A DNA stretch of 64,000 bases from assembly GCA_965235115.1 (NCBI GenBank), contig OZ249438.1, positions 6,510,001-6,574,000 of the forward strand, read 5' to 3'. The notes beneath the pieces are model-generated. The model was not told the DNA's origin. It did no database searches and worked only from the letters and a program-made list of their open reading frames with translations. Shown piece after piece: positions 22,401 to 56,745 of this stretch; position 1 is the stretch's first letter, and every line of letters begins with the position of its first letter. The DNA is from Laetmonice hystrix. Its lineage: Eukaryota. Both the position numbers and the translations under genes were made by a program.

Positions 22401-22668
22401 CATACATCTGCCTAAAGGTGCGCAGAGGCAGCGCGTTTGCATTCGAGCCAGTGTCTATTTTTACCCTGAGCTTGTGTACTCCAGGTACCAGTGGCAATTT
22501 TACATGGATCTCGGTGAATGCTTTATCCACTGCAACTGCATCCAGGTGCTTATCTGGGAGAGTTATGGTATAAAAACTCTTCACGGCAGTGTTACCCTTG
22601 TCCGAGCTATCCGATTCCATATGATGCGTAGTCTGAACATCATGAAACTGCCTCCTGCCTGATTGCAT
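19408..22668 (-). pseudogene. Gypsy pol (protease, RT, RNase H, integrase), frameshifted
   Basis: KIDTGSNAN (protease); CLDPKHLN..FSKLDA; GITDDVCV; VDASMKGLGA; HAGHQGIEK..C..C; GTDLF..DYYSKYP..SDNGPQY..YPKANGFIER. Confidence 0.92.
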
Positions 22669-29402: not shown

Positions 29403-30982
29403 ACTTTGGGAATATATTCAAATATCTTTTCACGGTGGTCCTTTCCATCCTATGGCTGCATAATACATTTGAATTTTTTGTTCCTGTTCCATAATGTGTA
29501 AATATACACAGGAAAGTTCTGGAAACACAAACACTGGTTGACACCTCTGCTTTAGAAACTTCCTGTCTGTCATTTAGTATAGGTCTAGGTTATTGCGTGT
29601 TGTTAATGAAGTTTTCCTGTTTTTAGATCTCAACTGCAACATCAGCTAGAAAGGGCAGTCAAATGGCAGGAAAGCAACAGTATAATATTAAAGATGATCA
29701 TCGCCTTCTCAAACCAAACCAGGCAAAACAACAGCAAATATCTTCAAGGGAAAAGACAACCTCTATTGTATCTACATCCACTGGAAGAAGCTCTGCTAAA
29801 ACGTATGAAAAATTTATAGAAGACATTCCAGGGAGCAGCTGCGAAGGAATAAGTATGGTAGAGCGAATCAGTCTCTATCAGGCGTACCTAGAGGATCTGG
29901 ATTCTACCTCCAAATGGAAATCTTCAGTCACACAGGTAGCTAAGGATAGAAGATCAGGCTCCATGAGAAAAAGTAGTACAGTCGGTAAAACAGTGAATGT
30001 TCAACCTGTTGGTGAACTGTGTAAACCATTGCGTGCAAGTGTAGAGGGAAAGCGTGGTAAAAGACAACTTGTCGGTGAACTGCGTGAACCACTCCATGAA
30101 AGTGTAGAGGGAAGGCATGGTGAACAGCAAACGAGAGTTGATGAGGATAATAGTGATGGAAACCCTGGTGACAAGGATGGAAGTTCAGATTTGGGTCTCC
30201 CTGAAGATGATGAGAGTGCCTCGACAGGCAGCTCACTTATTTTGATTGGTACAGAGAGAGACTGGAAGGAATGGACTGCATTTAAACCTCCTGATATAGA
30301 TAGTAGTTCAAAGACTTTTAGTAAAAATGTTCCCTCAGAAGTCAAATCACATGAAAAACAAAGTTGCAAAAGGAAACAATCTGCCCCCAAACTACCAAGC
30401 ATGCATTCTGTTATACATTTAGCTTCAGACAGTGAATCGGAGGCGGGAGATGATGACTTGAGCATTGTCTCATGTGACTTACCTAAGAAGCGTCCCAAAT
30501 GCTGCCGGTGTGGAAGGTTGAAGAGGCTGTTTAAACCATTCAAGTGTGATTCAACAAATACTTCCAGTATTAACAACACAGGACATCAGTCATGTAATAG
30601 TCATGACACACCTCAAAGGCACGCACACCAGAACCCGCTAAAACATGGCACGGTGATCGACCTTACCATTGATTAATGACGCCAGTATATCATTAAATTG
30701 AAGAAGTGCTATTCTTTTATGGTATTAGGTATTATATTTATTCACTTATGAAATACTCTGATGAAAATTTTGTGTTTCAATGATTCTTCGGCGCAATTCA
30801 TGTGGTAAATGACACCAAGATCTTGCTGGTAAAGTAACATGCATCATGCCTTACATAAAATGTAAGCCACAATTTTATAAAGTTTAATCCATGAAAAAAA
30901 TGAAGGTAGTGTTATTATGGTGTGTTAAAAACATATATAATCTGGAGAGATGTTGCATGCAGTGCACATGAAGGCATGAAGG
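29403..30982 (+). repeat. Segmental duplicate of about 8222-10967 (intron end, terminal exon, 3' UTR)
   Basis: Collinear similarity from CTTTGGG(G/A)ATAT to GCATGAAGG; 3' UTRs nearly identical. Confidence 0.92.
29627..30676 (+). CDS. Second intact copy of the putative POU6 terminal exon (350 codons, 2 repeat units)
   Basis: Acceptor ctgtttttag at 29626, phase 0, in frame with ORF 29663-30676; same C-terminus HGTVIDLTID*. Confidence 0.6.
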   Translation: MSTATSARKGSQMAGKQQYNIKDDHRLLKPNQAKQQQISSREKTTSIVSTSTGRSSAKTYEKFIEDIPGSSCEGISMVERISLYQAYLEDLDSTSKWKSSVTQVAKDRRSGSMRKSSTVGKTVNVQPVGELCKPLRASVEGKRGKRQLVGELREPLHESVEGRHGEQQTRVDEDNSDGNPGDKDGSSDLGLPEDDESASTGSSLILIGTERDWKEWTAFKPPDIDSSSKTFSKNVPSEVKSHEKQSCKRKQSAPKLPSMHSVIHLASDSESEAGDDDLSIVSCDLPKKRPKCCRCGRLKRLFKPFKCDSTNTSSINNTGHQSCNSHDTPQRHAHQNPLKHGTVIDLTID

Positions 30983-37100: not shown

Positions 37101-38169
37101 TGAAGGGTAGAGGGGCGACCCAGTATCCTCTGTCATCCTTGACAAACACATCCCGCATGATTGTCATGAATTGTCGGTCCTCATTCGACAGACCAGGTTT
37201 ATCATCATTCTTTGTTTTGATGAACACATCTCGGCCTATGCTGTCTTCTGTTTTGCAGCTACTGTTAATGTCTGGCAGAGTGCCGGATAGCGAGTGTGAG
37301 TCAGTGACAGCATCATCGCATAGAAGGATGCGATTGGAACAAGGAGAACAGAGAGATGGTCTCCCATTGTCAACAATGTGGGTCCGGTAGACGTCGATTT
37401 TGTCAGGCTTGTGCATTCCCTTGAGGCAGATGTCCCCCACAATGACCCAGCCGAGATCAGTACGTTGTGCCCACGGAGCATTTGCTGGTCCATTACGCGA
37501 CTCCCTAACTTTAAGAAGTTGTGGTGCATCCCTGCCGATGAGTAGCATGATTTCTGCCTCTGCGCGGTAAGGTGGGATTTTAGTTGCGATTGGGCGCATG
37601 TGACTGTAGATTTTAGCGACATCAGCAGTGGGAATCTCAGACCAGTTGCTAGGGATAACGTTACATTCTGTGATTGTCGGAAGCGGCAACTGCGTGGTGC
37701 CATCGATGGACTCAATGACCAGATCATTTATACGCCTCCCTAGTGCAGCACTTGAGCCCGCACATGTTCGCAGTTCATAAGGGATAGGCTCATTGTGACA
37801 GTTAAAGTAACTAAAGAGTTTACTGCTGGCGAGGGAACGGTTGGACTGGTCGTCCAGTACTGCATACATGGTGAGGACTTTGGTTGGGTTTTTGGCACTG
37901 TAGACATTGACTAGACATATTTTGGAGCATGACCTGTTGCCAAACCCACTCTTGGCACAGATCTTGGTGCAATTGTTGACAATCTTCACTGGCTCCCCGC
38001 CGTAGACTTGGCGGGACCCAGATGCTTGAGTTTTACCTTGAGAGCATGGGTGAAGCACCGAGCAGTGCTCAGTACTGTGGCAGTCAGAACACTGTATGCG
38101 CTCGTTGCAGTCGGCAGTTACATGTTGAGTTGATGCTGTACTGGGTGAGAAGTTGCATCCTGGTATCAA
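34177..38169 (-). pseudogene. BEL/Pao pol with two in-frame TAG stops and an integrase deletion
   Basis: YAVLDDQSNRS; LLIGRD; WYLPHF..RIVFDSS; ADVEHMF; FYVDDGL; LHVFCDAS; YTDSKVVL; SDCGTNF; FWSRWRKEYL. Stops at 36115-36117 and 35674-35676; GYWI|RG junction near 34921. Confidence 0.93.
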
Positions 38170-40219
38170 TGGACTTTGCTTTAAAGGCTCTGCAGTCAGC
38201 TAGCAGGTGATTTTTAGTGTTATGGAGCATGCAAGCTTGCCTTGGGTCCATCAATGACTGCGTGCTGTGTGAACCGTACCTTTCCGGTTTCCTTTGTGAA
38301 GTGTCATTAGATGCACTGGGTCTCACGTTCGTCTTGTTGACCCGAACTGTACCATAGGTTGGTCGTGTGCCTCTAGTTGGACGATACACGTTGCTTGGAG
38401 CAAACCGGGGTGCTTTTGTTGTAATTGGAGTGATTTGCAGGCTCAGGTCATTCCAGATATTGCATAATCGTCTGAGAAAGGCTGCTAACTCAGAAAATGG
38501 GGGAAAGCTTCCTCTATACAACTCCTTATACTTGAAGGCTTCGGCCCTCCAATTGTCCACTACAGGCGGTGGAAGTTTGGCTACGATAGGTTTAATAAAC
38601 TGAGGCGTATCCAACGCTGCAAGTCCACCGAGAGAACCATCATTTTTAGCTGCTTCCACTTCCTCGACTATGTCGCTAAATCTCTGCAAGCCTGGCCCAT
38701 CCCGTGATGCCACAGTAGGTAGTTGCTCCAGCTTCCGGATGAGTGCTTGCGTTACAGCTTCATCACTACCGAAGCGCTGGTATAGACGTCCCCATGCTTC
38801 ACTTAGACCTTTGTCCGGATTGGCTATGTATGCCCTACTAAGCCGCTTCACCATCTGTTGAGCCTCAGACCCCTCAGCCATGTGCTCAGCCATCAGATTT
38901 AACTGTTCATCTGAAGAGAGTGGAACATTTTTTATCATGTTGCAGAAGGATAATCTCCAAATCCTGAAGTCCTCTGCTTTGTCCTCAAATTTAAAGATTT
39001 TAGAAGATACCAAGTCTTGCCGTAGTAAATACTCGCCAAGGTTTTTCATGGACGAAACCATAGCTGCACTTCCCTCGCCTTCCACTCGTTGCATTTCATG
39101 TGGGTAGGTGGGAGAGGAGAGATGTGGAGAGACACAGCCTGCAGTCTGCCGAGTGTAGGCCTGGTCAGCTGCTGTGCGTGGTTGATGACTGATCCCTGGT
39201 GCAGTCATGGGTGGCATAGTTGGTGACGTGGTGTTACCCTGACACGGCATGTTTGAGACAGCTGGTTGCATTATAGGTGGGTACGCAGATGATGAGAGAC
39301 GTGGCGAAACTTGGCCTGTAGTCGGCTGAGTGCGAAACTGGTCAGCTGCTGGGTATGGTTGATGACCAATCCCTGGAGCAGTCATGGGTGGCATGGTCGG
39401 CGACATGGCGTTACCCTGACGTGGCATACTTGAGACAACTGAAGGTTGTGTTATAGGTGGGTACACAGATGATGAGAGACGTGGCGAGACGTGGCCTGCA
39501 GTTGGCTGAGTGCGAAACTGGTCAGCTGCTGGGTATGGTTGATGACCAATCCCTGGTGCAGTCATGGGTGACATGGTTGACGACATGGTGATACCCTGAC
39601 GTGGCATGCTTGAAACAGCTGAAGTTTGTGTGGTTGACATACCTGTGGCAAGTGACAACTTCTGTGGAGATTCATGACATGGGCTGTGATAATGCTCATT
39701 CATGGCTGCTGTGGTTGTGAAAACTTCATTATACTGGCTGGGTGCTGACTGTCCCATGTCCAGGTCACCCATGTACACTGTGCCCTTTGTGGGTGAGACA
39801 CCCGTCACTGAGTCTGAAACCTGTCGATCAGCAGGTAAGTCAATGTTTGGCGTACTGACCTTAATAGGTTGTCCCTGAGCTTCATCAGTACCTGAGAACA
39901 TTAGGTCCACCTTTTCAGCCGGTGTAGGTAGCTGAGACACGGGCATGCACTCATCGACGCCTCCACCTTCAAGTTCACAGAACGCTTCCTCGATAGCCCG
40001 GAGCCGTGCGTCTGCTACCGCCGCTTCTTCCTCGAGATGTAACCGCTCGACCTCTAACTGGCGTACCGTGGCTTCCAGTTGAGCCTGAGCCAACCTACCT
40101 CCGCTGGCTGCTCTAGTTTTGGCTTCCGCAGCCTTAGCTCGAGCTTCCGCTATGACAGTTGATGACTGTGATGAGCTGGATGAGCCGGTATGCGACCGTG
40201 AACAGCGAGATGCTGACAT
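38084..40219 (-). CDS. BEL/Pao gag with internal 60-aa repeats
   Basis: KFEDKAEDFRIWRLSF..EAWGRLYQRFGS..IVAKLPP..W is BEL gag-like. Confidence 0.88.
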   Translation of the reverse strand: MSASRCSRSHTGSSSSSQSSTVIAEARAKAAEAKTRAASGGRLAQAQLEATVRQLEVERLHLEEEAAVADARLRAIEEAFCELEGGGVDECMPVSQLPTPAEKVDLMFSGTDEAQGQPIKVSTPNIDLPADRQVSDSVTGVSPTKGTVYMGDLDMGQSAPSQYNEVFTTTAAMNEHYHSPCHESPQKLSLATGMSTTQTSAVSSMPRQGITMSSTMSPMTAPGIGHQPYPAADQFRTQPTAGHVSPRLSSSVYPPITQPSVVSSMPRQGNAMSPTMPPMTAPGIGHQPYPAADQFRTQPTTGQVSPRLSSSAYPPIMQPAVSNMPCQGNTTSPTMPPMTAPGISHQPRTAADQAYTRQTAGCVSPHLSSPTYPHEMQRVEGEGSAAMVSSMKNLGEYLLRQDLVSSKIFKFEDKAEDFRIWRLSFCNMIKNVPLSSDEQLNLMAEHMAEGSEAQQMVKRLSRAYIANPDKGLSEAWGRLYQRFGSDEAVTQALIRKLEQLPTVASRDGPGLQRFSDIVEEVEAAKNDGSLGGLAALDTPQFIKPIVAKLPPPVVDNWRAEAFKYKELYRGSFPPFSELAAFLRRLCNIWNDLSLQITPITTKAPRFAPSNVYRPTRGTRPTYGTVRVNKTNVRPSASNDTSQRKPERYGSHSTQSLMDPRQACMLHNTKNHLLADCRAFKAKSIDTRMQLLTQYSINSTCNCRLQRAHTVF
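39110..39620 (-). repeat. About 3 x 180-bp coding repeat in BEL gag
   Basis: SSMPRQG..PMTAPGIGHQPYPAADQFRTQP..VSPRLSSS.YPP, three times. Confidence 0.9.
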
Positions 40220-44329: not shown

Positions 44330-47300
44330 GCCCATCTTCCCACCTATGTATATTAAGGTAACAAAAAAACTACTGACCGAAAGCTAGGCGACCGACATGA
44401 GCTTGACCATCGGACTGCAGATAATTCGGACTAGACGTGGTCACTTTGATTCCCCAATCATTTGCAAACGATCTGAACTGTCGACTGTTGAACGGCATGT
44501 TATCAGTGATTATCTCCTCCGGAATCCCGTGCCGTGCAAACACACCCTTGACGTGACTTATTATGGCACCTGCTGTCTTTGACTGACCTAGACGTCCCGT
44601 TGGGACCCGGGATAAATAGGTTCCTTTGGTTTTATGGTCTTATAACTCTGTTTTCGCCGTGAATATGGCCCCAGATGCCGACACGGCGCAAAACCACCAC
44701 TACTCACTCACTTACTCTGACCTAGACGGGCCAACTCGGGGTACTTGGAGTAACAGTCAACGCATACTAAGTAGTCTGACCCTTTAAAGGTCATCACATC
44801 CATAGCCACCTTTTGGAATGGGTACTTGGGCACACTGTGCTGCATCAACGGCTTCTTTTGTTGCGCTGGCCGGTTCCTTAGGCACGTTCCACACCGGGAA
44901 ACCATACCATTAATCTGACTGTTCATGCTGGGCCAATAGACGACTCCTCTGGCCTGAGCCTTGCACTTCTCGGCCCCCATGTGCCCTTCATGCAAGATCT
45001 GCAACATATCCTGTCTCATATTCTCTGGAATAATAAGCCTCTGGCCCATAAACAACATTCCATCTGCTACAGTCAACTCGTCACGAACATTCCAGTATGG
45101 CCGCAACTCCCTGGGCAGGGACTTATATCTGTCCGGCCACCCTGTCGTGACTACCTGCTGCAATTGCTGCAATACAACATCTTCTGCTGTTTCCTTCCTG
45201 AGCTGTTGAAGCTTGTTCGGACTGGCTGGTATGTCCCTGATAACTGCATGGACCATGACTTCAATATCATCTGATAAAGTCGGCTCTGCTTCCCCCTGCA
45301 TGTATGCCCGCGACATCGTGTCTGCTAAGAACATTTCTTTCCCTGACGTGTACTTGACATCTAAGTCATACCTCTGGAGATGCATCATCATTCTTTGGAC
45401 TCTTGGCGATGCTTTGGCAACTGACTTTTTTAGAATGATTTCTAATGGCTTATGGTCAGACTGGACCTGCACACGTTTGCCAAAAAGATATTGGTGGAAC
45501 TTGGTACATGCGTAGCAGATCGCCAGCAGCTCCTTCTCCAGCTGTGCATAGTTTTGTCAGCCGATACGCATGGTCTCCTCTTCTTCAAGAAGAGAGACTG
45601 GCGTTAGTCTCCACTCCTTCAAGAACAGAGACCTTGCCCATTCCGCCCAGTGGTGGGCGTAAGAAATGGAGACTTTCTTCTTGAAAAATGAGAGCAGGTG
45701 TATACATTTAGACAAGGAAACTAAATTCTATTCTATCCTATCCCTATCCCTATCCCTGACCTTAACCCTAACCCCTGCCCAAACATTTAGTGGAAAGTTA
45801 TCATGGGGGAAGAACCCATTAACTTAACTATAAATATTTCAAGATGGCTCCTAGGCAAAATTTGATAGGTAGGACCAAACGAAACTTCATGCAAAATTTG
45901 GTGCTTTTATCCGCTCTGTAACGGTAATCTCAAATTATTGCGCTAAGCCACCTGACTAACAGGCTTCCCTTTCTGCAAAAGGCACGCCCCTAGGCCCGAC
46001 TGAGATGCATCTGCCTGAATCATTACAGGCTTGCTCACATCATAATACTTCAACACAGGCTCGTTCACTAGTACTGCCTTTATCCTCGACAATGCCTCCA
46101 CGTGCTCACGTTGCCAACTCCACTCAACATCCTGTTTGATTAAATGGTGCAGCGGAGCTGTAATTTCTGACTCATTAGGTATGAACTTAGCCAAATATTT
46201 GATCATGCCCAACAACCACTGTAGGGACGCACAATCTGTCGGCTGTGGCATTTCTACAATCGCCTGTATTTTTTCCGGGTCAGGCGTCAATGCACTTTCC
46301 CAGGTACTTAACCTGTTTGACCTTGAACTGAGACTTATCATTGAACTTCACATTTCGCTCACTGGCCCTGCACATGACCTTGTGTACTATTGCGTCATGA
46401 TCTTTGTCATCTACACCTGCAACTATCAGGTCATCATGCACTATGTTCACTCCCATAATGTCACCGAATGTTTCATACATCTTTCTCTGCAGCACCTCAC
46501 TGGCAGAACGTATGCCAAAAGGCATTCGTAAGAAACGCTTTCGCCCCCACGGTGTATGGAAAGTAGTATAGACACTGGACCTTTCTGTTAGCTTTACATG
46601 CCAGAATGCTTTGCCTGAATTTGCCTGAATTTCCTCAGCTGTTGGGATATGGAAATGCTCCCGGCTTAGGGTCTAAACAGATCCTTAATGACCCATTTTT
46701 CTTCTCTGTGATGACTAAGTTGTTAACCCAGTCTGTAGGCCCCTCTGCATCAGCTATCACTCCACTTTCAACCAACCTATCTAAGGCCTCTTTTACCTTT
46801 TCACGTTTAGCAAACGGTATCACGTGTGGAGACTGAACGACTCCAGGCACTGATGGGTCTAATTTTATATCGTAAGGCTGTTCAAACTGCCCTAAACCTT
46901 GCCAATTCTGTGGGTACATTTCTTTCAACCCTTGGTATTTCAGGCTTTGATCACTCACAATTGTATTCACACACTTAATCAACCCCATGGCCTCGGCTGT
47001 GGCACGACCCAGTAACACTCTCTCAACCTTGTCTACAACATAGAACTCAGCTACGTGTACATCAGAACCCTGATGCGCTTTACATGTCACCTTAACACTT
47101 CCTTCTGGGCGCACCCTCATGTTTGACTGAAACCCTGTTAAAACAACATTTGTAGGCTCGAGTGTCAGTTCAGCTTTGGTACACAACTGCTTGTAAATTT
47201 TTAATGGCATCACATTTCCTTCAGCACCAGAGTCAAGTTTTGCTCTCAACTTTACTCCTTCAAAGCTTATCGTTGCAACCCATTTACCAGTCTGCCCAGC

Positions 47301-48375
47301 GGACTCACAGTTTAACACCTGGACTGTTCCAAGAAACACTTCTGGGCTTTCATCTTCACTGTCACCTGCCACACTCTGACTCATGGCATGGACCTGCCGC
47401 TGCTGACTACGATGATAGATGGCAAAGTGATTGAACCCGCCACACTGATTGCAGCGTCTCCTGTAAGCAGGACACTCCCTGGGCCCGTGTACACGACCAC
47501 TTGCAGTATTGCCTGGCACCACTGCCGTGCCCGACAGGCTGCTGACGGTCCTTGTCACTCTCGACTGAGCCCCGGTTGCCACCTTGTCTTCCGTTCATCC
47601 AACGGCCTGACCTACCCGTAGTCGTAGATGATACACCCTGAACTGCATGGACTTCGATTGGCCCACCAGTAGATATCATTTCCTTCATCTGTCGCTCTGT
47701 CGATTCTGCTGCATTGCACACATTCACAACTTTGTTGAGGGTTAACTCAGGCTCTCTTAACAGACGCTCCTTCACACGCCCATCACGTATCCCAAACACG
47801 ACTTTGTCCCCGATCATGAGATCTTCATCGGCAAACTCACAACTAGCCGCCCGAATATGTAAGTCTTTGAGCCATTGATCTACTGTCTCACCCTCTGCCT
47901 GATTGCGGCTCCAGAAACGGTACCGTTCAAAAACAGTATTCTTACGTGGCCTGCAATATTCTCCGAACTTCGTCAGCACTGTCTCATAGTCCTGTTTGTC
48001 CTCACCTTCGGCGAACGGAAACTGAGCATATATTTCCTGGGCTTCTGGCCCGGCCGCATGCAACAAAATGGCGACCTGTACCTTCTTTGCTTTGGCACCC
48101 AACTCACACGCATCGAAATAGGTCCGAAACTGACCTTCCCAACGCCGCCACGCTTCATCGACGTTGCTGACATCAAAGTCGAAACACTGGGGGGGTTTTA
48201 GCATGTCCATCCTCGATCCTTTTACAGAAACCCGGCCTCTTCTGACACCATGTCATAAAAGTACAAACACGTGCGTTGGGGTTTGTTGGGCGGAAGCCCT
48301 GCTTCTTTAATAAAGTCCACTAACACCAGGTGGCTACATGTGCTACCCGTTACAACCCAGTAGCATATCACGACA
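44330..48375 (-). mobile_element. Gypsy element: 5' LTR, tRNA-Leu-type PBS, gag, pol; 3'-truncated
   Basis: Probable LTR 48251-48375 (TGTC..GACA) followed by TGGTGTCAGAAG, complementary to the tRNA-Leu 3' end. Gag 47407-48210; KLDSGAEGN; VHDDLIV; ADASQSGLGA; HEGHMGAEKC; FARHGIPE. Confidence 0.9.
44595..44716 (+). mobile_element. 5'-truncated LINE 3' end inserted in the Gypsy integrase
   Basis: Matches 6720-6845, ends in ACTCACT; 12-bp TSD CTGACCTAGACG at 44583-44594 and 44717-44728. Confidence 0.9.
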
Positions 48376-48914
48376 GTTATGATGTTAAACCCAGTCCAAC
48401 TTGGAACAGCTTGACCCTCCTGATCTGCTTGCCTGGCAAGGAACCACGATAGGTTTTTGCTGAGGGCAGCCTGAGCAGCTTTTTTGGCATCGAGGATATA
48501 GCTGTCTTTGGTAGGGGGCCCACACGTGCACCAGGCACATAGATTTGCAGATCTTGTTGGGAAGTGCTGACAGACCTCTGTTTCTTAGTATATAATGTCG
48601 TTTATTTCACCACAAGATATTTACAAGGTAGTGTGCTATTGTAGTTTCATGTACATAGTAATAACTTCAGATGGATATTCACATTTGACCAATATGTGGG
48701 ACAGAAAAACCTTATGGTGATGTAGGGTTGAAGCTTAAAGCTTAAGTACCCTGTCTCAGTCTCAATACATGGAATTAATTGGAATAAAATGATCTTAATA
48801 CATAAAAAGGTACAAAATACTGTTACTTAATTCACTGTAAAATAGTTCTGCAGTGTGATCTATTCACTATGCGTTTTTGTATGAAAAGTCATATAATACA
48901 GTATACTATTGTAG

Positions 48915-51900
48915 TCATTCAATGTCTCCATTTAGAAGCAGGTCTTTAACTAGGCGTTTAAAAACACAGAAGTTCATATCATTAACAGTGGTCAGGATAT
49001 TACAAACATTGTTCCACAGTTTCACTCCAGCACACCTTATACATGAGGATTTAAGTTGATTTTTTGATATAGGTATATGCAACAAATTTGCTTGTCTTGT
49101 GTTATATGAATGTATAGTCACATTAACCTGATAGAAATCGTCAAATACATTTGGAAGCATTGAAGCATGATATTTGAACATAAATAGAAGTACCGTGTAC
49201 TTGTATATTTCAGAAAGTTGTAATATCTTTAGTTTTATAAAAACTTGTGAAATAGATTCAAATCGTTTTACTCCAGCCATGATCCTGATTGTCTTTTTCT
49301 GTAATTTAACAAGTGGTAATAATGTCGTGGCATTTGCGCCTCCCCATACCGTTAAGCAATAGGTGAAGTATGGATAAACAAAAGTGTAATACATATTAAC
49401 TAATGTTTCTCGATTAAGGTATTTTCTTGCTTTACGCAATATACCCATAGCTTTAGAAATTTTATTAGATAAGTAGTGCACATGTGACCTCCAAGATAAA
49501 TTTTCCTCCAATATAACTCCGAGAAACTTAATTTTTTCCACTTTAGAAACGTTATCATTGTTAATTTTGACAGGCAATTCTGTTCTGCAGTTTTTATGTT
49601 TCGGTCTAATAAGCATATAGTTAGTTTTCGTAACATTCAGGCATAATTTGTTTGCGTTCAGCCAATCATAAAGTAATGCTAATTTTTCATTCATGACTGT
49701 ACATAAATAGTGTTCATTTTTTCCATGAACAAAGACGTTTGTGTCGTCTGCAAACATAAGTAAAAATAAGTCTGGTGAGACATTTGCCATATCATTTACA
49801 TACATAAGGAACATCAAGGGTCCCAGAATGGACCCTTGCGGTACACCACAATTTACAACAGTTTCGGGCAAGGCAATTTTATTATATAATACTCTTTGCT
49901 TTCGGTTTGATAAATAATCTCTAAACCAGTCCAATGCAATCCCCCTGATTCCATAATGCTCTAATTTCTTTAACATAATATCGTGATTTACTGTGTCGAA
50001 TGCCTTTAAGAAATCTAAGAAAACACCTAATATTACTTCCCCTTTTTCAAGAGAGCTTATCAGCCTATCAAGTAGCAACAGCAGTGCCATTTCCGTTGAC
50101 CTTCTTTTTTGGAACCCGAATTGGTATTTATAAAGAATAGAGTTTGACCTGAGGAATGAAAAAAGTCTGTTATGCATAAGGCGTTCAAGTATTTTTGAAA
50201 ACACGGGAAGTACGGACACTGGTCTGTAATTTGTTAATTTATTTCTATCACCTGCTTTAAAGATAGGAGTTACATTAGCAATTTTCAATTCTGTGGGGAC
50301 AGCACCTTGTTCTAATGATAAGTTGAATATATACGTTAATGGATCTAGTAGTGGCGTGGACACCTTTTTTATCAATGTGGGTTTAAGATCGTCCCATTCT
50401 GCACTTACATCCTTTATTTTACTGATTATCTTGTTTATTTCTTTTTGACTGGTTGGATTTATGTAAAATGAATGTGGAGATCTTTCAGGAAGGAATGTTA
50501 ATGGATTGGTTTTAGTAATGGGTATTTTTTTAGATAAGCTTTGTCCAATATTTGTAAAGTATGTATTAAATGATTCAGCAACTTCTCGGTCTCCTTTAAT
50601 TGTTACATTATTGTGGATAAGTTCAATAGTTTTGTTACTATCGTTGTTGGTGTTAATTATTTGTTTAAGTATTTTCCAAGACTTTTTGAGATCGTGCTTG
50701 TTTTCGCTGAGTACATTTTGGAAATGATTGCGTTCTGCACTTCTAATCAGTTGAGTCAATTTATTTCGATATGTTCTGTAGTATTTCTCATCAACAGCTT
50801 TTGAGGTAGTCTTACTCCTTTGAAATAATTTATTTTTTACTCGAATTGACTTTTTAAGTCCTTCCGTTAACCATGGTTTTCTATTACGATACCTTTTCTT
50901 CACCCTTTTGAGCGGAAATCTATGTTTGAACTTGTCAGTTATTATATTTTGAAATTCAGAATATGCAGTTTGCACCCCATTGTGCTGGTAAATCACATTC
51001 CAGTCTGTGTTGACAAGGTCTTGTTTGAATCTTTCGATATTTTTTATACTGAAATCCCTTGTTAAGAAATATTCACTCTCATTTGATTTAGTACAGTAAT
51101 CTAGGATGGCGTATATTGGAAAATGATCCGAGACGTCCGACAGTATTATGCTATACTTATGTCTATCTAAGGCGACAATATCGTTGGTAAAAATATTGTC
51201 TATAAGTGTTGAGGAGGTGCTTGTTACTCTTGTCGGTTTCATGATTAATGGCAGGAATGAGTTCTCATACATCAGATTAAGGAAATTGTTACTTGATTCA
51301 TGATGTTCAACATTAAGCAAATTAATGTTGAAATCACCCATAATATAGCATACAGTATTCTCTCTCTTCATGTCAGTTAGGCACTGTGCAAAAGTTTCTG
51401 AAAATAAATCAATATTTGTGTTCGGCGGTCAGTATACAACTCCAAAAATCATATTCTCTTTTATACCAAAGTCCTCTCCCTTGATTTCAATGAATAAACA
51501 TTCTAAGTAGTTTGTGACCATGCTGATATCTGAGCGCACAACATACGGTATGTGGTCCCGTATAAAGAGTGACACACCACCACCCTGCTTGTCCTCTCTG
51601 TACAATCCCTCATGTTTGTATCCTTCCATACCATACCTTTCAAAACTATTTTTTCCAAGCCACGTTTCAGAATTTCCTATAATGTCAAACTTAAGTTTCA
51701 GATTTTCTAAAAGGATTTCAAGTTTATTGAGGTTTCGAGGAATGCTTCGGATATTGATATGTAATGTTGCCAACTTGTTACTTGAACATTTTACCAACTC
51801 ACGATTTAGGGATTCCTCAGAAACGTATTTACATGAAGTGATGATATTACTGCTATAATTATTCAGAAAATTGACATCAGGATCAATGTTTTCTAAAAAA

Positions 51901-52262
51901 TGATCCTCTTTTCTATCTATTTCATATGCAGGATAACACATATTCTCAATTTCTCTAAGTGTTATATTATTGTATAAGTGAATGTTTGTTTCGGTCATGG
52001 TAGCGTATTCATCATCATCCAAGTTTTGAAATGGCAAAGCTTCTCTTATACATACAGGGCAAATCCAGTTTGTACTTAGGCCTGCATGGATATAATCATC
52101 TTTTGTAAAAAATGGCAAACAACGTATATGGGTAGACTCTTGGCAGGCAGAACAGTTTAAGACAAGATCGTGTCTATTCAATCTCTTTTTACATAATTTA
52201 CAGGTATGACAGCCATCGTGTATTTGTTTAGAAATGCTCTTACTTTGTACTCCTATATACAT
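48915..52262 (-). CDS. LINE ORF2: PHD finger, APE endonuclease, RT; one in-frame TGA at 51429-51431
   Basis: CKLC..CSAC..THIRC..WICPVC; HINIRS..SETWL; VY*PPN; MGDFN; SDHFP; NYRPVSVL; FLDFLKAFDTVNH; GVPQGSILGP; FADDT; KFLGV. Confidence 0.93.
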
Positions 52263-52301
52263 ATTTACAGTTCATTCGCAAGCGTTCATGTATAGAACTA
52301 C

Positions 52302-53438
52302 TTATAGTCTGTCTAGTGCGGCGTGCCCACACCTCTCGATTAGTTCAAACCTCTTAGGGCCAATGTGTCTCCCTCCATACCATCGCGAAACTACCACAAT
52401 AACATTTGTTTTGTTTTGTTCCTTTAGCATCTTTAGTAGCTTACCACCAGCGCCATATTCGCCATCGTCTTTCATGCCTTCTTGTATTTTGTTTCCAGAG
52501 CCAAGCCGGTATGCGTAGATGTTATGTGTCGCACTTGCTACTAGACGATCCTCAAGTAGCTTAGCTAGTACCGGTGCCACACCCACGGTCTTGGAGAGTT
52601 TGGCACTGTGCCCCTGGAAAGTGCTGCCTCCCTCCGTATGGTGGTCTGTATGCAGAAGTTCCACATCGCGGGCTTTTTCCATGTCCTCCGGTGTAATGTC
52701 CGTGTGGTGATCTGGCACCATGTGAACTTGACCATTAATGACAAGTTTGTCACCGCGCCACGACACCCTGTTGTTGGCATCTCTTTTCGCATCTTTGTAT
52801 GTCTCCATCAGTCTCTTCCTTTTTTCCTGAACTTGAGCCGGAAGCTGCTTGTTCACCCAGTAGGTTTTACCAGCTAGGTTCCTTGCGTGTTTCATCACGA
52901 CATCCTTGCCTTTGGTGGAGTTAAATTTGGCCACAATTGGTCTATTCCCTCCACGTCGGTACCCCATTCTGTGGACTCTATCCATCGCAATCTCGTCGGC
53001 GTTTTGAATATCCATTTCTTGCTTCATGAACTGAACTAGCTTTCTTTCAGTTTCGTCATTGTTCTCATCTTGCGTTTCTGATATGCCTTTGAATACCAGG
53101 TTGTCCCGCATTGATCTAGAAGTTAGATCAGTGATCTCTTCTTCTTGGTTAGCCATCTTCACGCTCATACGTGCCACAATCCCCTCTGTCAGTTTTAACC
53201 TTTGTTCCATGCTTTTCATTTCTTGTCTCAGCTCCTGGTTTTCCGTGGTCAAGATTCCAACTGTGTGTTTGAGTTGTTTTAGATCGTCTTTCACCAAATC
53301 AACAAACTCTTTCAGTAGTGTTGACTGGTTCGCTTCTATTCCTGTAAGAATGGCTATGACGTCAGGGCTTTCGCTTTCTTCGTCCCCAGTCAGCTGTAGC
53401 GACTTGGGTCCCTTTGTTCTCCTTTGTTTGTCCGACAT
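52302..53438 (-). CDS. LINE ORF1: coiled coil, L1-ORF1-like RRM/CTD, C-terminal IMPACT/YigZ (UPF0029) domain
   Basis: Heptad region; RDNLVFKGI..DRVHRMG..RPIVAKF; then STFQGH..ASATHNIYAYR..DDGEYGAGGKLL..VIVVVSRWYGG..GPKRFELI. Confidence 0.9.
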   Translation of the reverse strand: MSDKQRRTKGPKSLQLTGDEESESPDVIAILTGIEANQSTLLKEFVDLVKDDLKQLKHTVGILTTENQELRQEMKSMEQRLKLTEGIVARMSVKMANQEEEITDLTSRSMRDNLVFKGISETQDENNDETERKLVQFMKQEMDIQNADEIAMDRVHRMGYRRGGNRPIVAKFNSTKGKDVVMKHARNLAGKTYWVNKQLPAQVQEKRKRLMETYKDAKRDANNRVSWRGDKLVINGQVHMVPDHHTDITPEDMEKARDVELLHTDHHTEGGSTFQGHSAKLSKTVGVAPVLAKLLEDRLVASATHNIYAYRLGSGNKIQEGMKDDGEYGAGGKLLKMLKEQNKTNVIVVVSRWYGGRHIGPKRFELIERCGHAALDRL

Positions 53439-53990
53439 GGTTCAAACAGTGGGCTTTGTGTATTGGACTTTTCGTTTCCTCAGGTCCAATCGTTGAGTTT
53501 CCAAGAATTCTTGAAATTTCCAGTTGTTACACTAAATGGAGCCACCAAACTGACACCAATAGAATCCTTGTATCCTTATATGTAATATGTATAGGTTTTG
53601 GAGTATAATGCCACACTAAAAGTGGTAGAAATCACACTGTAATCCGAGAGCAAGTAGAAGACGTGTACCCATGTGCGTAATCCGTAATCCGTCTGTGGTA
53701 GTTCAGCTCGAGGGGTGTGTGGTCCATATACCTTTGCCTGTACTGCAATGCCGTTCACTCGGTGTGACGTGCCCTTTTCTGTGAGAGTCTCCTCTAGTCT
53801 GTCGATATTGTCCCATGCAAGATTGGTTAACACATACGGCTTGATGGACGCTGGAAGTACAACGGTTTGATTACCTGCCATCTTCTGGAGACACAAAGCA
53901 GTGTCGTTTTCTTCCAACTGGGAGTAAGAGACACCATGCCCAAGCTTATTCAGCATTTGGATGAGCTCAACGTTTCCAGTCAACGTTTTA

Positions 53991-55380
53991 CAGGGATGAA
54001 AGTTTTCAGGAAATTTCCTGAAATCAGGAAATTTGAAAAAATCCCCCCCCCCCCCCCCCAAGAAATAACACCCAAAAAAGGAAATAGGCCTAGATCTATA
54101 GGCAAAAGAGGTAGGCCTAAGCCAAGGCTAAGTATTGCCCTGGACTGTGTGGTGGGCAATTTTATTTGTTAATATCAAATGAAACAATATCCCCTTCCAG
54201 GACGTTTTTTAACACCATGCAGCTTCAATATATCTCTACCTGCCCAAAGTTCGTTTATAGATGGGGGTATTAGTGTCTCAAACAAACCCGTCCAGTGTCA
54301 CGGGTGCCGCCGTGCATAGGCCGGTCTGCCGGGGGTGCTGGTGTACCGCCCGCGGTCCCTGTAGCTGTGGTCACATCGCTCACATAGACCGGCCCGCGTG
54401 GGCCCGTGTCGCTGTGGTGAGAGCGACTCCCCTCAGGTAATGACTTCAGGCAAAACTGATGGTCAGGCAGCTGCGAAGCCCGTTGATTCAGGCTTGCCAT
54501 TATGCCATATCCATGCGCGAGTTTTGCCTGAGCGCTCACTTAGTGATAGCAATGAGACTATAGACAGACCGGTCTGTCTAGTCCCGGCAATAGTGATTAG
54601 GCTGACGAACTACGCACCATCACAATGTCACTCCTCACAGGAAACTGGGTCAATTTAGTTCTATGAATCTGCCTAGTTCTCATAATGTTTTCTTGCATAT
54701 AAATTTGAGGATAATGGCATTACATATATAAGTGGTTTTCACTGAAGTTTTGGGGTTGTCAGGACTTTTGATTACATTTGTTGATCAGTGCAGGTGTCCT
54801 GATAAGACCGGAAATGACAATAATCACAACAACATGAGTGGCACATGGACACACGGGCTGAACCACTCGACTCAGCGACTGTGTTGCTTGGCTGAGAGCC
54901 GCTGAGGGTCGTGACTGCTGAGGGCCAAGACTGACGGACAGCCTGTGTGGTCAGTCCAACACATGGAAGCTGTTTGACAATGTAATCGGGTGCATTTTGG
55001 ACGCTAAAAGCCGACTGGATCCCAATGTTGGAGAGAGACGGCAGAGCCAGGCACTGAGTGACAGGCAAGCAACAGCCTTGAACAGGGGCATGGACTGATG
55101 AGTGATGGAGTCTATCCAGCAAATTTGCAGGGGTGGGGGTTGGGGGGTTGGGGGGGGTGGCGACTAAATACTGAGGGCTAGGCCCTATAATATATAATAG
55201 CTAGGAGGCCTTATCGGATCATGATTGTCTGCTGTTCCTAGCCTGACTTTTTTTAAGGGGGGGGGGGGGTAAGCCCCTTGGATGTGCGCATGAACAAATA
55301 TTAATTATGGACATTGGCCCCCGCCGCTGCCCCCCGGTCAGGATTTCAGGAAATTTTACAGCTGGCCACTTTCATCCCTG
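53991..55380. mobile_element. Non-autonomous hAT-like element (1390 bp) with a 6-bp TSD
   Basis: Perfect 13-bp TIR CAGGGATGAAAGT; GTTTTA at 53985-53990 and 55381-55386; removing it restores the host reading frame. Confidence 0.92.
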
Positions 55381-56745
55381 GTTTTAACTGCATATGGAAG
55401 AAGGAGATGTTTTGGTGGTTGATACTGGCCACATGTTACTGCATATATTAGATCCTGACTAATTGACTGAACAAGAGTGGTTACTCTTTCCGATTGTAAT
55501 TTTGCATCTGCATCTCCAGTCAGAAGTCCCAGAAGAAACCGCTCCAGCTTATTTGGAATTGAAATATGAGCATCACTATTCATATCAGATGGATGGCATG
55601 GCCACGGAGTGGATTTCATGTCTTGCCTAATTACTGAACAGATTTGTGCTGAGGACTGATCAATGATGTTGTTACTTGTTGCATTCGATGCCCAAACTCC
55701 CAGTTCCTGACGTATAATTTGATTTTCCAAGACTACATCCTTCAACGATACACTTTCTGGAACCACTAGCAACTTTCCTTTGTCATTTGGAAATATGTCA
55801 ATCGAATCTCCCAACTCATATTCCAATCTTCTTCGAATGTGCTTTTTGGTCGAATCCCTCATATGTCCGACCCTCAAGGTGAGTAATGATTCCAGCTTTT
55901 GCGTTAAGGACACCAATGTTACAATCTGTTTCTTTGGAGTGATTTCAGTCCTAATATACTCAAAAAGATTGTCATACGCTTCATTTTCAATCATAGTATA
56001 TCCATGGGTATCATTGACTTCCTGATTATTACATTGGTGCTCATTATTGTGTGACTTCGTATCTCTTGTGTAGTTTTTATAGCAGGAAACATGGTGGTAG
56101 TGTGCCTCTGCAGCCACAATGTCTCTACTGGTGAGTGCAAGAAGGGACTCGTCTCTCTTGCAAAGTGCACATTCTCTTAGTGTTTGGTCAGCTCTCAACT
56201 GTAAGGCTTGTGTCAGTTTTTCGCGTGTCTTGGAGCCTTTCTGAAACTTTACCTTCTGGCAGAAAATACACACTTGATCATACACCCTTGACTCTGATGA
56301 CGATCTTCTAGATGGTCTTTTAGATGAACATGTATAAATACAGTCTGACTCGTCATTAGGTTTCCTTTTTAGTGTCTCTAAATCCCTTTTCATGGTGAAA
56401 AGGCTTCTGCATTTACGATGATACAGAATCTGTGGAACTTCTTCTTCCTCAAGCTCTTGTGCTAAGTGTAGCAAAGCAGCATGGTTTCGAATCTTGGCGG
56501 CATTCAGTAAAGTTACCTAGGACTCATGACTCTGTGCACTGACTAACTTATCTTCTGTACATGTTGTCATATGTATGATACACTGCTCTCCATGGATTCT
56601 TGTGTTGAAGGGTTTCCATTCTGGCTATTTTCTAGAAAGCAATATTACCAAAATATCTGAAAAAAACCCACAAAAATCATAAGACTGCATAAACCCCACA
56701 GGCAGGGTAATGAAAAACTAAGGATGTGGTACAAATGAATGTTAA

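What the first reader, a model, noticed from the sequence alone, without database searches (positions are those of the whole stretch)
52302..52655. LINE ORF1 carries an IMPACT/YigZ 'ancient domain'
Seen: the last 117 aa or so of an intact ORF1 contain STFQGH, ASATHNIYAYR, DDGExGAGG.LL and VVVSRWYGG..GP.RF..I, which are the signature blocks of the IMPACT C-terminal (UPF0029) domain. They are fused after a coiled coil and an L1-like RRM/CTD, inside a full-length LINE. Known: cellular IMPACT/Yih1 has this domain plus an RWD domain and dampens Gcn1-Gcn2 stress signalling. Accessory ORF1 modules I know from CR1/L2 elements are esterase, PHD and CCHC; I do not recall IMPACT among them. The RWD domain is absent here. 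Inference: a retrotransposon lineage has domesticated a host translation/stress or RNA-binding module, possibly for RNP handling or to counter host defence.
Basis: partly seen in the sequence, partly recalled or inferred. Interest (0 to 1): 0.85.

Follow-up and report, generated by a model that had tools for sequence, protein, structure and literature searches.

The report
LINE ORF1 protein carrying IMPACT domain
A young jumping gene (LINE) in this animal genome makes an RNA-packaging protein that ends in a complete copy of the IMPACT/YigZ "ancient domain". The same fusion recurs in several LINE lineages here and in well over a hundred protein clusters elsewhere, so it is a real, selected and apparently undescribed accessory module, though what it does is unknown.

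Summary
Window 52305-52658 (minus strand) encodes the last ~117 aa of an intact 378-aa ORF1. It matches Pfam PF01205 over the whole model (E 5.4e-25), and its predicted fold matches yeast Yih1 and bacterial YigZ.

The rest of ORF1p is an L1-type coiled coil, RRM and CTD. There is no RWD domain.

The element spans 48587-53691 (5105 bp) and is full length. It belongs to a young family with 93-99% identical, mostly 5'-truncated copies. Its PHD-APE-RT ORF2 carries one private in-frame stop.

The fusion is not a one-off:
- Three LINE lineages in this genome carry the domain. One places it after a GDSL esterase and before CCHC knuckles.
- 194 retrieved proteins (138 clusters at 50% identity) have RRM/CTD followed by IMPACT.
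- Partner ORF2s range from a true L1-clade ORF2 to non-L1 types.
- The closest PHD-APE-RT relatives elsewhere have the same ORF1 backbone without the domain.

Non-synonymous divergence is low although synonymous sites are saturated. The signature residues shared with cellular IMPACT are kept in 183 non-redundant copies.

Function is inferred only. I think the domain is most likely a peripheral partner-binding module on the ORF1p trimer. It cannot act by RWD-mediated Gcn1/Gcn2 inhibition.

The literature I could search contains no description of this fusion. Verdict: a new variant of a known kind, of moderate to high interest.

The parts
48587..53691 (-). Full-length non-LTR retrotransposon (LINE), 5105 bp, 'family A'
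   Evidence: Other copies share a 5' end at about 53689-53691 and a 3' end at about 48584-48587. The flanks are contiguous, apart from 8 bp, at the paralogous empty site C3:2313597-2313910.
53439..53691 (-). 5' UTR (253 nt); starts with a GGATTAC GGATTAC repeat
   Evidence: The C18 copy shares the same 5' end.
52302..53438 (-). ORF1, 378 aa, intact (coordinates include the stop codon)
53112..53360 (-). ORF1p residues 27-109: long helix, predicted parallel trimeric coiled coil
   Evidence: AF2 model. Trimer model scores 0.73 against a best control of 0.00; contacts fall at heptad positions 52-109.
52848..53102 (-). ORF1p residues 113-197: RRM of L1 ORF1p type
   Evidence: Profile hits to 2ykp, 2w7a and 2ldy. 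Foldseek hits 2yko and 2w7a.
52722..52838 (-). ORF1p residues 201-239: short C-terminal domain (CTD) of L1 ORF1p type
52305..52658 (-). ORF1p residues 261-378: IMPACT/UPF0029 'ancient domain' (Pfam match covers residues 271-375, i.e. 52314-52628)
   Evidence: PF01205 E 5.4e-25. Yih1 6bqi by sequence and by fold. Signature residues are conserved.
52263..52301 (-). 39-nt ORF1-ORF2 spacer. ORF2's ATG is in the ORF1 frame, but a 5-codon mini-ORF ending in a second in-frame stop lies between them.
   Evidence: Read directly from the sequence.
48915..52262 (-). ORF2 (PHD-APE-RT), split into 277-aa and 818-aa pieces by one in-frame stop
52050..52202 (-). PHD finger at the N-terminus of ORF2
   Evidence: PF00628 E 1.2e-5, 25.7 bits against a cut-off of 24. 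The same PHD is present in ORF2 relatives L054-L059.
51102..51827 (-). Apurinic-type endonuclease region (approximate limits), interrupted by the stop
   Evidence: The C-terminal half matches PF14529 at E 1.4e-4 and PF03372 at E 3.6e-3, both below the cut-off because the domain is split. Homologues at 45-47% identity carry PF03372/PF14529.
51429..51431 (-). In-frame TGA that breaks ORF2 in this copy only
   Evidence: The 99.1% identical C5 copy has a sense codon at this site.
49509..50237 (-). Reverse transcriptase domain
   Evidence: PF00078 E 3.8e-35.
48587..48914 (-). 3' UTR (328 nt). AATAAA lies about 20 nt before the end; there is no poly(A) or microsatellite tail.

Best explanation
SHOWN. 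This is a genuine LINE ORF1 protein built from five parts: a disordered N-terminus, a trimer-forming coiled coil, an L1-type RRM, a short CTD, and a complete IMPACT/UPF0029 ancient domain at the C-terminus. It sits in a young, recently active LINE family whose ORF2 is PHD-APE-RT and is not of the L1 clade. The domain is an old, mobile accessory module of LINE ORF1s. It recurs in divergent lineages, in two ORF1 architectures (L1-type and esterase-type) and beside very different ORF2s. It is under purifying selection and keeps the residues that are invariant in cellular IMPACT.

INFERRED. The ORF1p trimer coats the LINE RNA through its RRM-CTD and displays three IMPACT domains on its periphery. 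These domains do what the ancient domain does everywhere, which is to engage a universally conserved partner through the conserved loop face. My preferred partner is the translation machinery. This would couple ORF1p to the ribosome that is translating the LINE mRNA, aiding cis-loading and possibly re-initiation at ORF2, 39 nt downstream of the ORF1 stop. The domain cannot act as cellular IMPACT does on Gcn1/Gcn2, because the Gcn1-binding RWD domain is missing.

I rate the anatomy and selection claims at about 0.95 and the mechanism at about 0.3.
For: Domain identity: PF01205 at E 5.4e-25 over the full model; Yih1 6bqi at 3.9e-31 with the family profile; Foldseek hits 6bqi, 2cve and 1vi7.

L1-type backbone: 2ykp/2yko/2ldy by profile and by fold. 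The AF2 model has pLDDT 92.2. The trimer model scores 0.73 against a best control of 0.00. In the tool's calibration that mark was reached by 21 of 30 proteins solved as homo-pairs and 0 of 23 solved as single chains. Runs agree on at least 79% of contacts and partner pLDDT is at least 80. The interface is the heptad positions 52-109, and the IMPACT domain is not part of it.

Part of an active LINE: there are about 14 further copies at 91-99% identity, nearly all 5'-truncated with a common 3' end. A second copy (C18) shares the 5' end and the ORF1-ORF2 junction.

Recurrence: families A, B and C in this genome; 25 PF01205 hits genome-wide; 194 proteins with RRM/CTD then IMPACT, of which 138 are distinct 50%-identity cluster representatives. 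ORF1-IMPACT lies upstream of APE-RT on four independent contigs. One of these partner ORF2s is a true L1-clade ORF2, at 2.7e-122 to human ORF2p.

Selection:
- Between subfamilies A and A2, synonymous sites are saturated (pS about 0.8). pN is 0.125 in the domain and 0.159 in the rest of ORF1.
- In family C, pN is 0.28 in the domain and 0.45 in the rest.
- Fifteen signature residues are kept at 81-98% across 183 non-redundant TE copies and match the host-invariant residues.

Partner-binding face: the invariant features of Yih1 and YigZ cluster in loops on one side of the molecule (PMC4503747). That paper cites earlier work for Yih1/IMPACT binding ribosomes and actin.
Against: No experiment bears on function. 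The molecular role of the ancient domain is itself described as unknown (PMC7140605).

The reported ribosome- and actin-binding regions of Yih1 overlap the linker as well as the ancient domain. Ribosome binding by the domain alone is therefore not established.

In family C the domain is internal, followed by CCHC knuckles. This weakens the idea that it acts as the last part to emerge at ORF1 termination.

The closest PHD-APE-RT relatives do without the domain, so it is dispensable for that ORF2 lineage.

No RNA data were available for this organism.
Confidence: 0.5

Rival explanations
1. The domain is an enzyme or small-ligand-binding module. It would act on a nucleotide or nucleic-acid modification and be carried by LINEs as a counter-defence or RNP-processing activity. 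In this reading it is functionally interchangeable with the NADAR hydrolase domain found in the same slot of related ORF1s.
For: Family C ORF1 is Zn-finger/coiled coil, then GDSL esterase, then IMPACT, then CCHC. Its homologue P0392 aligns across the N-terminus, the esterase and the CCHC knuckles but has NADAR (PF08719, E 1.4e-21) where family C has IMPACT. The near-invariant polar residues H305, D324, D325, E327, R352 and R363 look like an active or ligand site. Unchecked first-stage notes report NADAR-ORF1 LINEs in this same genome.
Against: I could find no reported catalytic activity for any UPF0029 member. The slot swap rests on one metagenomic protein. Co-occurrence with an esterase does not show that the domain is itself an enzyme.
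Confidence: 0.2
2. The domain is a decoy of cellular IMPACT. ORF1p would compete with host IMPACT for the ancient domain's partners (ribosome, actin, CDK1) and so alter stress signalling or translation in favour of the element.
For: The domain is 44-49% identical to animal IMPACT and keeps the host-invariant residues. Host IMPACT is present in the genome as an intron-split gene on C7.
Against: The Gcn1-binding RWD domain is absent, and Gcn2 inhibition maps to RWD (PMC7140605). All ORF1-borne domains lie apart from the host clade on a long, well-supported branch (100/99). A decoy would be expected to track the host protein.
Confidence: 0.1
3. The domain is a neutral passenger, a chance exon capture with no function for the element.
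For: Close PHD-APE-RT relatives lack it.
Against: It persists across lineages whose synonymous sites are saturated. It has lower non-synonymous divergence than the RRM/CTD part of ORF1 and conserved signature residues in 183 non-redundant copies. It occurs in at least 138 clusters at 50% identity.
Confidence: 0.03
4. The ORF is a host gene (a domesticated ORF1-IMPACT fusion) that merely lies next to a LINE ORF2.
For: ORF1 is markedly more GC-rich than ORF2 (GC3 0.46-0.51 against 0.32).
Against: A second copy (C18) shares the 5' end, ORF1 and the ORF1-ORF2 junction. The whole 5105-bp unit is absent from a paralogous empty site. The same GC contrast is seen in families A2, B and C. ORF1 and ORF2 diverge in parallel between A and A2, at about 70% nucleotide identity each.
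Confidence: 0.02

Closest known systems
L1-type (type II) ORF1p: human and mouse LINE-1 ORF1p (PDB 2ykp, 2yko, 2ldy, 2w7a)
   Same: A coiled coil predicted to trimerise, a single RRM and a CTD, in the same order. Found by profile and by fold. The trimer model passes its controls.
   Different: Pfam PF02994 does not reach E 0.01 on the single sequence. The CTD is short and is followed by a 20-residue linker and a 117-residue IMPACT domain that no solved or surveyed ORF1p carries.
IMPACT / Yih1 (PDB 6bqi) and bacterial YigZ / TTHA1053 (1vi7, 2cve)
   Same: A full-length UPF0029 ancient domain with the same fold and the same invariant residues.
   Different: It has neither the RWD domain of eukaryotic IMPACT nor the C-terminal domain of YigZ. 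It is fused to an RNA-binding retrotransposon protein. It falls outside the animal IMPACT clade.
L2 'subgroup 5', type IIB elements of Metcalfe & Casane 2014 (PMC4120745): Transposase_22-type ORF1 with a PHD at the start of ORF2
   Same: The same overall layout: a CC-RRM-CTD ORF1, then a stop and a new start, then a PHD at the N-terminus of an APE-RT ORF2. L059 from another sample has exactly this layout without IMPACT.
   Different: ORF1 here has the extra IMPACT domain. Membership of the L2 clade itself could not be tested because I had no reference RT sequences.
Esterase-type (type IV) ORF1 of CR1/L2 elements (e.g. zebrafish ZfL2-1; PMC3905857)
   Same: Family C in this genome has the GDSL/SGNH esterase ORF1 (PF13472 at 2.6e-10 and 3.7e-11).
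   Different: Family C adds an IMPACT domain after the esterase, and CCHC knuckles after that. The 2014 survey found esterase ORF1s only in vertebrate groups.

Membership tests
UPF0029 / IMPACT ancient domain (Pfam PF01205) | Match to the family HMM above the curated cut-off, over the whole model | tested here: met
   87.9 bits against a cut-off of 27, E 5.4e-25, profile positions 2-107 of 107.
UPF0029 / IMPACT ancient domain (Pfam PF01205) | Fold of Yih1 ancient domain / YigZ N-terminal domain | tested here: met
   Model pLDDT is 96-98 across the domain. Foldseek gives 6bqi 4e-7, 2cve 3.9e-6 and 1vi7 7e-5.
UPF0029 / IMPACT ancient domain (Pfam PF01205) | Invariant signature residues (F; A.A.H...AYR; DDGE; R; G..RF) | tested here: met
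   All are present in the window copy. They are conserved at 81-98% in 183 non-redundant TE-borne domains and at 98-100% in 62 host IMPACT proteins.
Eukaryotic IMPACT/Yih1 protein (Gcn1-binding regulator) | N-terminal RWD domain (PF05773) that binds Gcn1 | tested here: not met
   No RWD hit at E 0.01. The N-terminal 260 residues are coiled coil, RRM and CTD. The protein is therefore a carrier of the domain, not an IMPACT orthologue.
Eukaryotic IMPACT/Yih1 protein (Gcn1-binding regulator) | Groups with cellular IMPACT in a domain phylogeny | tested here: not met
   The host clade (14 vertebrate and arthropod sequences plus P0214) is separated from all ORF1-borne domains with 100/99 support. The tree is unrooted and host sampling is narrow.
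Type II (L1-like) ORF1p | Coiled coil that trimerises | tested here: met
   Helix at 27-109. Homotrimer model scores 0.73 against a best control of 0.00, with heptad-spaced contacts. This is model support only and may partly reflect memory of solved L1 ORF1p trimers.
Type II (L1-like) ORF1p | Single RRM followed by a CTD, homologous to L1 ORF1p | tested here: met
   Profile against PDB: 2ykp 5.8e-7, 2ldy 3.5e-5, 2w7a 1.2e-3. Foldseek 2yko at 2.8e-7, with TM-score on the target 0.57-0.66.
Type II (L1-like) ORF1p | Pfam PF02994 (Transposase_22) match | tested here: not met
   No hit at E 0.01 with the single sequence. The homology is seen only with a profile or a structure.
APE-type non-LTR retrotransposon (LINE) | ORF2 with an apurinic-type endonuclease and a reverse transcriptase | tested here: met
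   RVT_1 at 3.8e-35. The APE C-terminal half matches at 1.4e-4, below the cut-off because the domain is split by the stop. Full-length homologues carry PF03372/PF14529.
APE-type non-LTR retrotransposon (LINE) | Copies 5'-truncated to varying extents, with a common 3' end | tested here: met
   Copies start at query positions 1761, 3727, 3768, 4707, 4710, 4860 and others, and all end at 5208-5217.
APE-type non-LTR retrotransposon (LINE) | Target-site duplication | tested here: inconclusive
   The window copy shows none. Eight bp of the empty paralogous site are missing instead. The C18 copy is flanked by AAGCTTA on both sides.
L1 clade | ORF2 closely related to L1 ORF2p | tested here: not met
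   The window ORF2 scores only 5e-9 to human ORF2p, no better than to R2 (1.4e-10). The L053 ORF2 scores 2.7e-122.
CR1/L2 (Jockey superfamily) clade | RT groups with CR1/L2 reference elements | not testable with these tools
   No named CR1/L2 reference sequences were reachable. The layout (PHD at the ORF2 start, no poly(A) tail) resembles L2 subgroup 5, but this is only a resemblance.

The most novel reading that the evidence does not exclude
The IMPACT/YigZ ancient domain has been a universal domain of unknown function for about 25 years. The novel reading is that it is a catalytic or ligand-binding module which LINEs deploy interchangeably with NADAR hydrolases in the same ORF1 slot. That would make it part of a retrotransposon counter-defence or RNA/DNA-modification toolkit. 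The many ORF1 fusions, together with natural with/without pairs, would then give the first tractable handle on what UPF0029 does in all cells.
Probability: 0.15. Interest if true: 0.85.

Novelty: new variant of a known kind. Interest (0 to 1): 0.62.

Why it matters
Two open questions meet here. One is why LINE ORF1 proteins collect accessory domains such as esterase, PHD and CCHC, and what those domains do for retrotransposition. The other is what the IMPACT/YigZ ancient domain does at the molecular level.

A fusion that recurs under selection places this domain in a defined setting: on the periphery of an RNA-coating trimer, without its usual RWD partner. Nature also supplies comparators. There are sister elements with the same ORF1 backbone but no domain, and esterase-type ORF1s with IMPACT or NADAR in the same slot.

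This makes the domain's contribution directly testable. It also extends the catalogue of ORF1 types, which in the survey I could read has five types and no IMPACT.

Tried and rejected
Literature.
- No paper combines UPF0029, PF01205 or YigZ with retrotransposons.
- Several searches were swamped by the ordinary word 'impact' or the surname Yigzaw.
- Absence in this library does not prove the fusion is undescribed.

Organism. Run names are coded and homologues are unnamed. The assembly accessions GCA_024449465.1 and GCA_003704795.1 gave no paper. The only hint is that the Atlas clusters are 'commonest Mollusca'.

Expression. No RNA run holds the sequence.

RT clade naming. No reference CR1/L2 sequences were available. 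The Atlas search on ORF2 was uninformative.

Chimera idea. The jump in GC between ORF1 (GC3 about 0.5) and ORF2 (0.32) first suggested a recent chimera. I rejected this because families A2, B and C show the same contrast, and because ORF1 and ORF2 diverge in parallel between A and A2.

Host IMPACT gene. It is therefore missing from the tree.

Outgroup. No bacterial YigZ or non-animal IMPACT sequence was reachable, so the tree is unrooted.

Family C homologue search. The search saturated at 8000 candidates and returned only two hits. The spread of the esterase-IMPACT layout remains unknown.

dN/dS ratios. They could not be computed between subfamilies because synonymous sites are saturated. Only pN and pS are reported. 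The one young pair, L031/L032, has too few differences and includes a degraded C-terminus.

TSD of the window copy. None was found.
Full report
OBSERVATION

On the minus strand the window holds an uninterrupted 378-aa ORF at 53438-52302. Pfam PF01205 (UPF0029, the IMPACT 'ancient domain') matches residues 271-375 across positions 2-107 of the 107-position model. The score is 87.9 bits against a curated cut-off of 27, at E 5.4e-25, so this is not a chance resemblance.

A PDB sequence search finds the yeast IMPACT homologue Yih1 (6bqi, E 3.8e-14) and Thermus TTHA1053 (2cve). With a 62-sequence family profile, 6bqi rises to 3.9e-31 and E. coli YigZ (1vi7) also appears. No RWD domain is present.

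REST OF THE PROTEIN

The same profile hits human L1 ORF1p (2ykp/2yko, about 6e-7), the RRM-CTD structure 2ldy (3.5e-5) and the RRM alone, 2w7a.

An AlphaFold2 model built on the alignment is confident (mean pLDDT 92.2, pTM 0.79). It shows:
- a disordered N-terminus;
- one long helix at 27-109;
- an RRM at 113-197;
- a small CTD at 201-239;
- a linker;
- a compact alpha/beta domain at 261-377.

Foldseek against the PDB returns only two kinds of significant hit: L1 ORF1p trimers (2yko, 2.8e-7) and IMPACT/YigZ structures (6bqi 4e-7, 2cve, 1vi7).

A three-copy model of residues 50-378 supports a parallel trimer:
- It scores 0.73 against a best control of 0.00.
- In the tool's calibration that mark was reached by 21 of 30 proteins solved as homo-pairs and by 0 of 23 solved as single chains.
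- The runs share at least 79% of contacts, and partner pLDDT is at least 80.
- The tool warns that the calibration used two copies and that a pass may reflect memory of solved relatives.

The confident contacts are heptad-spaced positions 52-109 plus a few RRM residues. The IMPACT domain takes no part in them. ORF1p is therefore a type II (L1-like) ORF1 protein with an extra, peripheral C-terminal domain.

THE ELEMENT

A DNA search of the genome (627 Mb in 35 contigs) defines the unit. Other copies begin at query position about 112 and end at about 5212-5217, which correspond to window 53691 and 48587. The two flanks of the window copy are adjacent at a paralogous site, C3:2313597-2313910, and only 8 bp (TTGAAAAG) lie between them there. 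The window therefore holds a 5105-bp insertion into another repeat, without a clear target-site duplication. A second copy on C18 is flanked by AAGCTTA on both sides.

Layout of the element:
- 253-nt 5' UTR;
- ORF1;
- a 39-nt spacer holding a second in-frame stop;
- ORF2 at 52262-48915;
- a 328-nt 3' UTR with AATAAA about 20 nt before the end and no poly(A) or microsatellite.

ORF2 starts with a PHD finger (PF00628, E 1.2e-5). It continues with an endonuclease whose C-terminal half matches PF14529 at 1.4e-4, and then a reverse transcriptase (PF00078, 3.8e-35). One in-frame TGA at 51429-51431 splits ORF2. A 99.1% identical, 5'-truncated copy on C5 has a sense codon at that site, so the stop is private to this copy.

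About 14 further copies at 91-99% identity were scored. Nearly all are 5'-truncated at different points and share the 3' end, which is the signature of recent LINE activity. Only the window and C18 copies retain this family's ORF1, and only the window's ORF1 is intact. These counts are lower bounds, because the tool scores only the best candidates.

NOT A ONE-OFF

A protein search of the genome, followed by tblastn on 10-kb loci, shows the domain in three LINE lineages.
- Family A is the window, together with a 73-78% identical subfamily A2 (L031, L032).
- Family B (L033-L035, L037, L038, L047) has a 361-370-aa coiled-coil/RRM ORF1 ending in PF01205 (E about 4e-11 to 7e-11) and an APE-RT ORF2. 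It is 25-35% identical to family A.
- Family C (L039-L044) is different in kind. Its 520-627-aa ORF1 has an N-terminal Cys-rich/coiled-coil part, a GDSL esterase (PF13472, 2.6e-10 and 3.7e-11), then PF01205 (3.3e-16 and 4e-14), then CCHC knuckles. Several near-identical intact copies exist.

A Pfam-model scan of the whole genome gives 25 PF01205 hits. The cellular IMPACT gene is probably the intron-split match on C7.

Outside this genome:
- HMMER over 1.84 billion cluster representatives gives 146 hits below 1e-30.
- Among the proteins I retrieved, 194 have RRM/CTD followed by IMPACT, always in that order. Of these, 138 are distinct representatives of 50%-identity clusters.
- In 166 of the 194 the domain lies within 15 residues of the C-terminus.
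- None of 62 cellular IMPACT proteins has the RRM.
- Four independent contigs show ORF1-IMPACT directly upstream of an APE-RT ORF2.
- The ESM Atlas holds two Impact_N clusters, of 57 and 242 members, resembling ORF1p. Both are labelled Eukaryota, commonest Mollusca.

RETICULATE DISTRIBUTION

The ORF2 next to ORF1-IMPACT in L053 is a true L1-clade protein (2.7e-122 to human ORF2p over residues 5-884). The window's ORF2 and family C's are not: they score about 5e-9 and about 3e-10 to L1, no better than to R2. Yet the ORF1s of the window and L053 are 38% identical over 310 residues, while their ORF2s align only partially at about 20%.

Conversely, the nearest relatives of the window's ORF2 in other samples (L054-L059) are PHD-APE-RT at 42-48% identity. 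They have no IMPACT homology in 1.6-3.6 kb of upstream sequence. In L059 the upstream 304-aa ORF is the same coiled-coil/RRM/CTD backbone (hhalign probability 98% to profile columns 39-235) and ends just after the CTD. That is the 'type IIB, L2 subgroup 5' layout of Metcalfe & Casane 2014: a Transposase_22-type ORF1 with a PHD at the start of ORF2 (PMC4120745). The window element is that layout plus IMPACT.

In the esterase-type ORF1, the metagenomic homologue P0392 aligns with family C over the N-terminus, the esterase and the CCHC knuckles. It carries NADAR (PF08719, 1.4e-21) where family C carries IMPACT. P0393 carries esterase plus IMPACT. The domain therefore behaves as a cassette that moves among ORF1 backbones and ORF2 partners.

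SELECTION

Between A and A2, synonymous sites are saturated (pS about 0.8). Non-synonymous divergence is 0.125 in the domain and 0.159 in the rest of ORF1. In family C the values are 0.28 and 0.45. The domain is thus at least as constrained as the RNA-binding core.

Across 183 TE-borne domains that are no more than 90% identical to one another, the following residues are kept at 81-98%: F274, A301, A303, H305, A309, Y310, R311, D324, D325, G326, E327, R352, G360, R363 and F364. The same residues are 98-100% conserved in cellular IMPACT.

A maximum-likelihood tree was built from 87 domains over 120 columns. It places the 14 vertebrate and arthropod IMPACT proteins, plus P0214 (a protein with three tandem IMPACT domains), on one side of a 100/99-supported branch. 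Every ORF1-borne domain lies on the other side. The TE backbone is unresolved, and family C groups weakly with B.

This argues against repeated recent captures from host genes and fits one old acquisition followed by exchange among LINEs. The tree is unrooted and host sampling is narrow. The domain scores higher against animal IMPACT (about 96 bits) than against yeast Yih1 (56 bits) or bacterial TTHA1053 (20 bits), which suggests a eukaryotic, possibly animal, source.

MECHANISM

Shown: the architecture, the predicted trimer with peripheral IMPACT domains, the retention of the conserved face, and the lack of RWD.

From the literature:
- Gcn2 inhibition by Yih1/IMPACT works through RWD competing for Gcn1, and the function of the ancient domain is 'still unknown' (PMC7140605).
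- Its invariant features cluster in loops on one side, which suggests binding to a conserved molecule. Yih1/IMPACT associates with ribosomes and actin through regions overlapping the linker and the ancient domain (PMC4503747).
- From my own memory, not tested here: the YigZ N-domain is classified with the ribosomal protein S5 domain 2-like folds, and its C-domain with EF-G-like domains, which again points to the translation apparatus.

Inference: ORF1p trimers present three copies of a module that docks on the translation machinery or another universal partner. This would favour co-translational loading onto the LINE's own RNA, and perhaps re-initiation at ORF2 39 nt downstream.

I give the mechanism about 0.3. 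The main rival (about 0.2) is that the domain is an enzyme or ligand-binding unit used like NADAR. A decoy of host IMPACT (about 0.1) is less likely, given the missing RWD and the deep split from host sequences. The passenger and host-gene readings are contradicted by the data.

NOVELTY

The survey of 448 Jockey-superfamily elements lists CCHC, RRM, coiled coil/Transposase_22, PHD, esterase and zinc finger/leucine zipper, and no IMPACT. It reports esterase ORF1s only in vertebrate groups. A 2024 study of gastropod non-LTR elements does not mention the domain either. No paper in the searchable library links UPF0029, PF01205 or YigZ with retrotransposons. I could not consult Repbase, Dfam or InterPro architecture tables, so prior curation cannot be excluded.

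I class this as a new variant of a known kind: a LINE ORF1p with a previously unlisted accessory domain. It is widespread, selected and modular.

EARLIER NOTES OF THIS SCAN

Nothing had been noted at this place, and nothing mentions IMPACT. Unchecked first-stage notes report NADAR-bearing LINE ORF1s elsewhere in this genome. I saw an esterase-NADAR ORF1 only in a metagenomic homologue, so those notes are a lead, not support.

Noticed in passing
L041:1519-3399 and L039:1649-3343 (G000 C3:34039000-34048900 and C3:3111500-3121400); also L040, L042-L044: A third LINE lineage has an ORF1 built as Cys-rich/coiled-coil N-terminus, then GDSL esterase, then IMPACT domain, then CCHC knuckles. Several near-identical intact copies exist. 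The 2014 ORF1 survey reported esterase-type ORF1s only in vertebrate groups.
   Followed up: partly
P0392 (ENA metagenome protein, 627 aa) compared with L041 ORF1: A homologous esterase-type ORF1 carries a NADAR domain exactly where family C carries IMPACT. This suggests interchangeable accessory cassettes. It fits unchecked scan notes of NADAR-ORF1 LINEs in this genome.
   Followed up: partly
P0214 (569 aa, metagenome or genome protein): This protein has three tandem PF01205 domains and no RWD. In the domain tree it groups with cellular IMPACT, not with the ORF1-borne domains.
   Followed up: no
window 52305-53438 versus 48918-52262; also L031/L032, L035, L039, L041: ORF1 is consistently more GC-rich than ORF2 (GC3 0.41-0.55 against 0.31-0.41) in all four families. 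The contrast is kept between subfamilies whose synonymous sites are saturated, which points to a maintained difference in codon composition between the two ORFs.
   Followed up: partly
window 53692-56500 and 48400-48586; paralogue at G000 C3:2313300-2314200: The LINE inserted into another repeated element. Its flanks are 98-99% identical to a second locus. That element carries ORFs at 53576-54061 and 55356-56474 on the minus strand, which I did not identify.
   Followed up: no
window 8568-10661 (+) and 29663-30676 (+): Two paralogous ORFs share their N- and C-termini. The first is expanded by about 20 tandem copies of a ~21-aa unit (…GELREPLRASVEGRHSERQPV…).
   Followed up: no
window 19837-23423, 34177-40219, 44708-48210 (all minus strand): There are three LTR-retrotransposon-like gene sets (gag with CCHC, protease, RT, integrase). 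The window is almost entirely transposable elements, and I found no host gene usable for taxonomy.
   Followed up: no
G000 C3:6.27-6.93 Mb (around the window): Several family A and A2 copies and PF01205 hits cluster within about 0.7 Mb of the window (C3:6266980, 6373558, 6740349-6746351, 6916434, 6932253, 6933029). This may be a TE-rich domain of the chromosome.
   Followed up: no
L034:4886-8403 (G000 C4:34103200-34113100): A family B copy is split inside its RT by a nested insertion that encodes large integrase/RT-like ORFs on the opposite strand.
   Followed up: no
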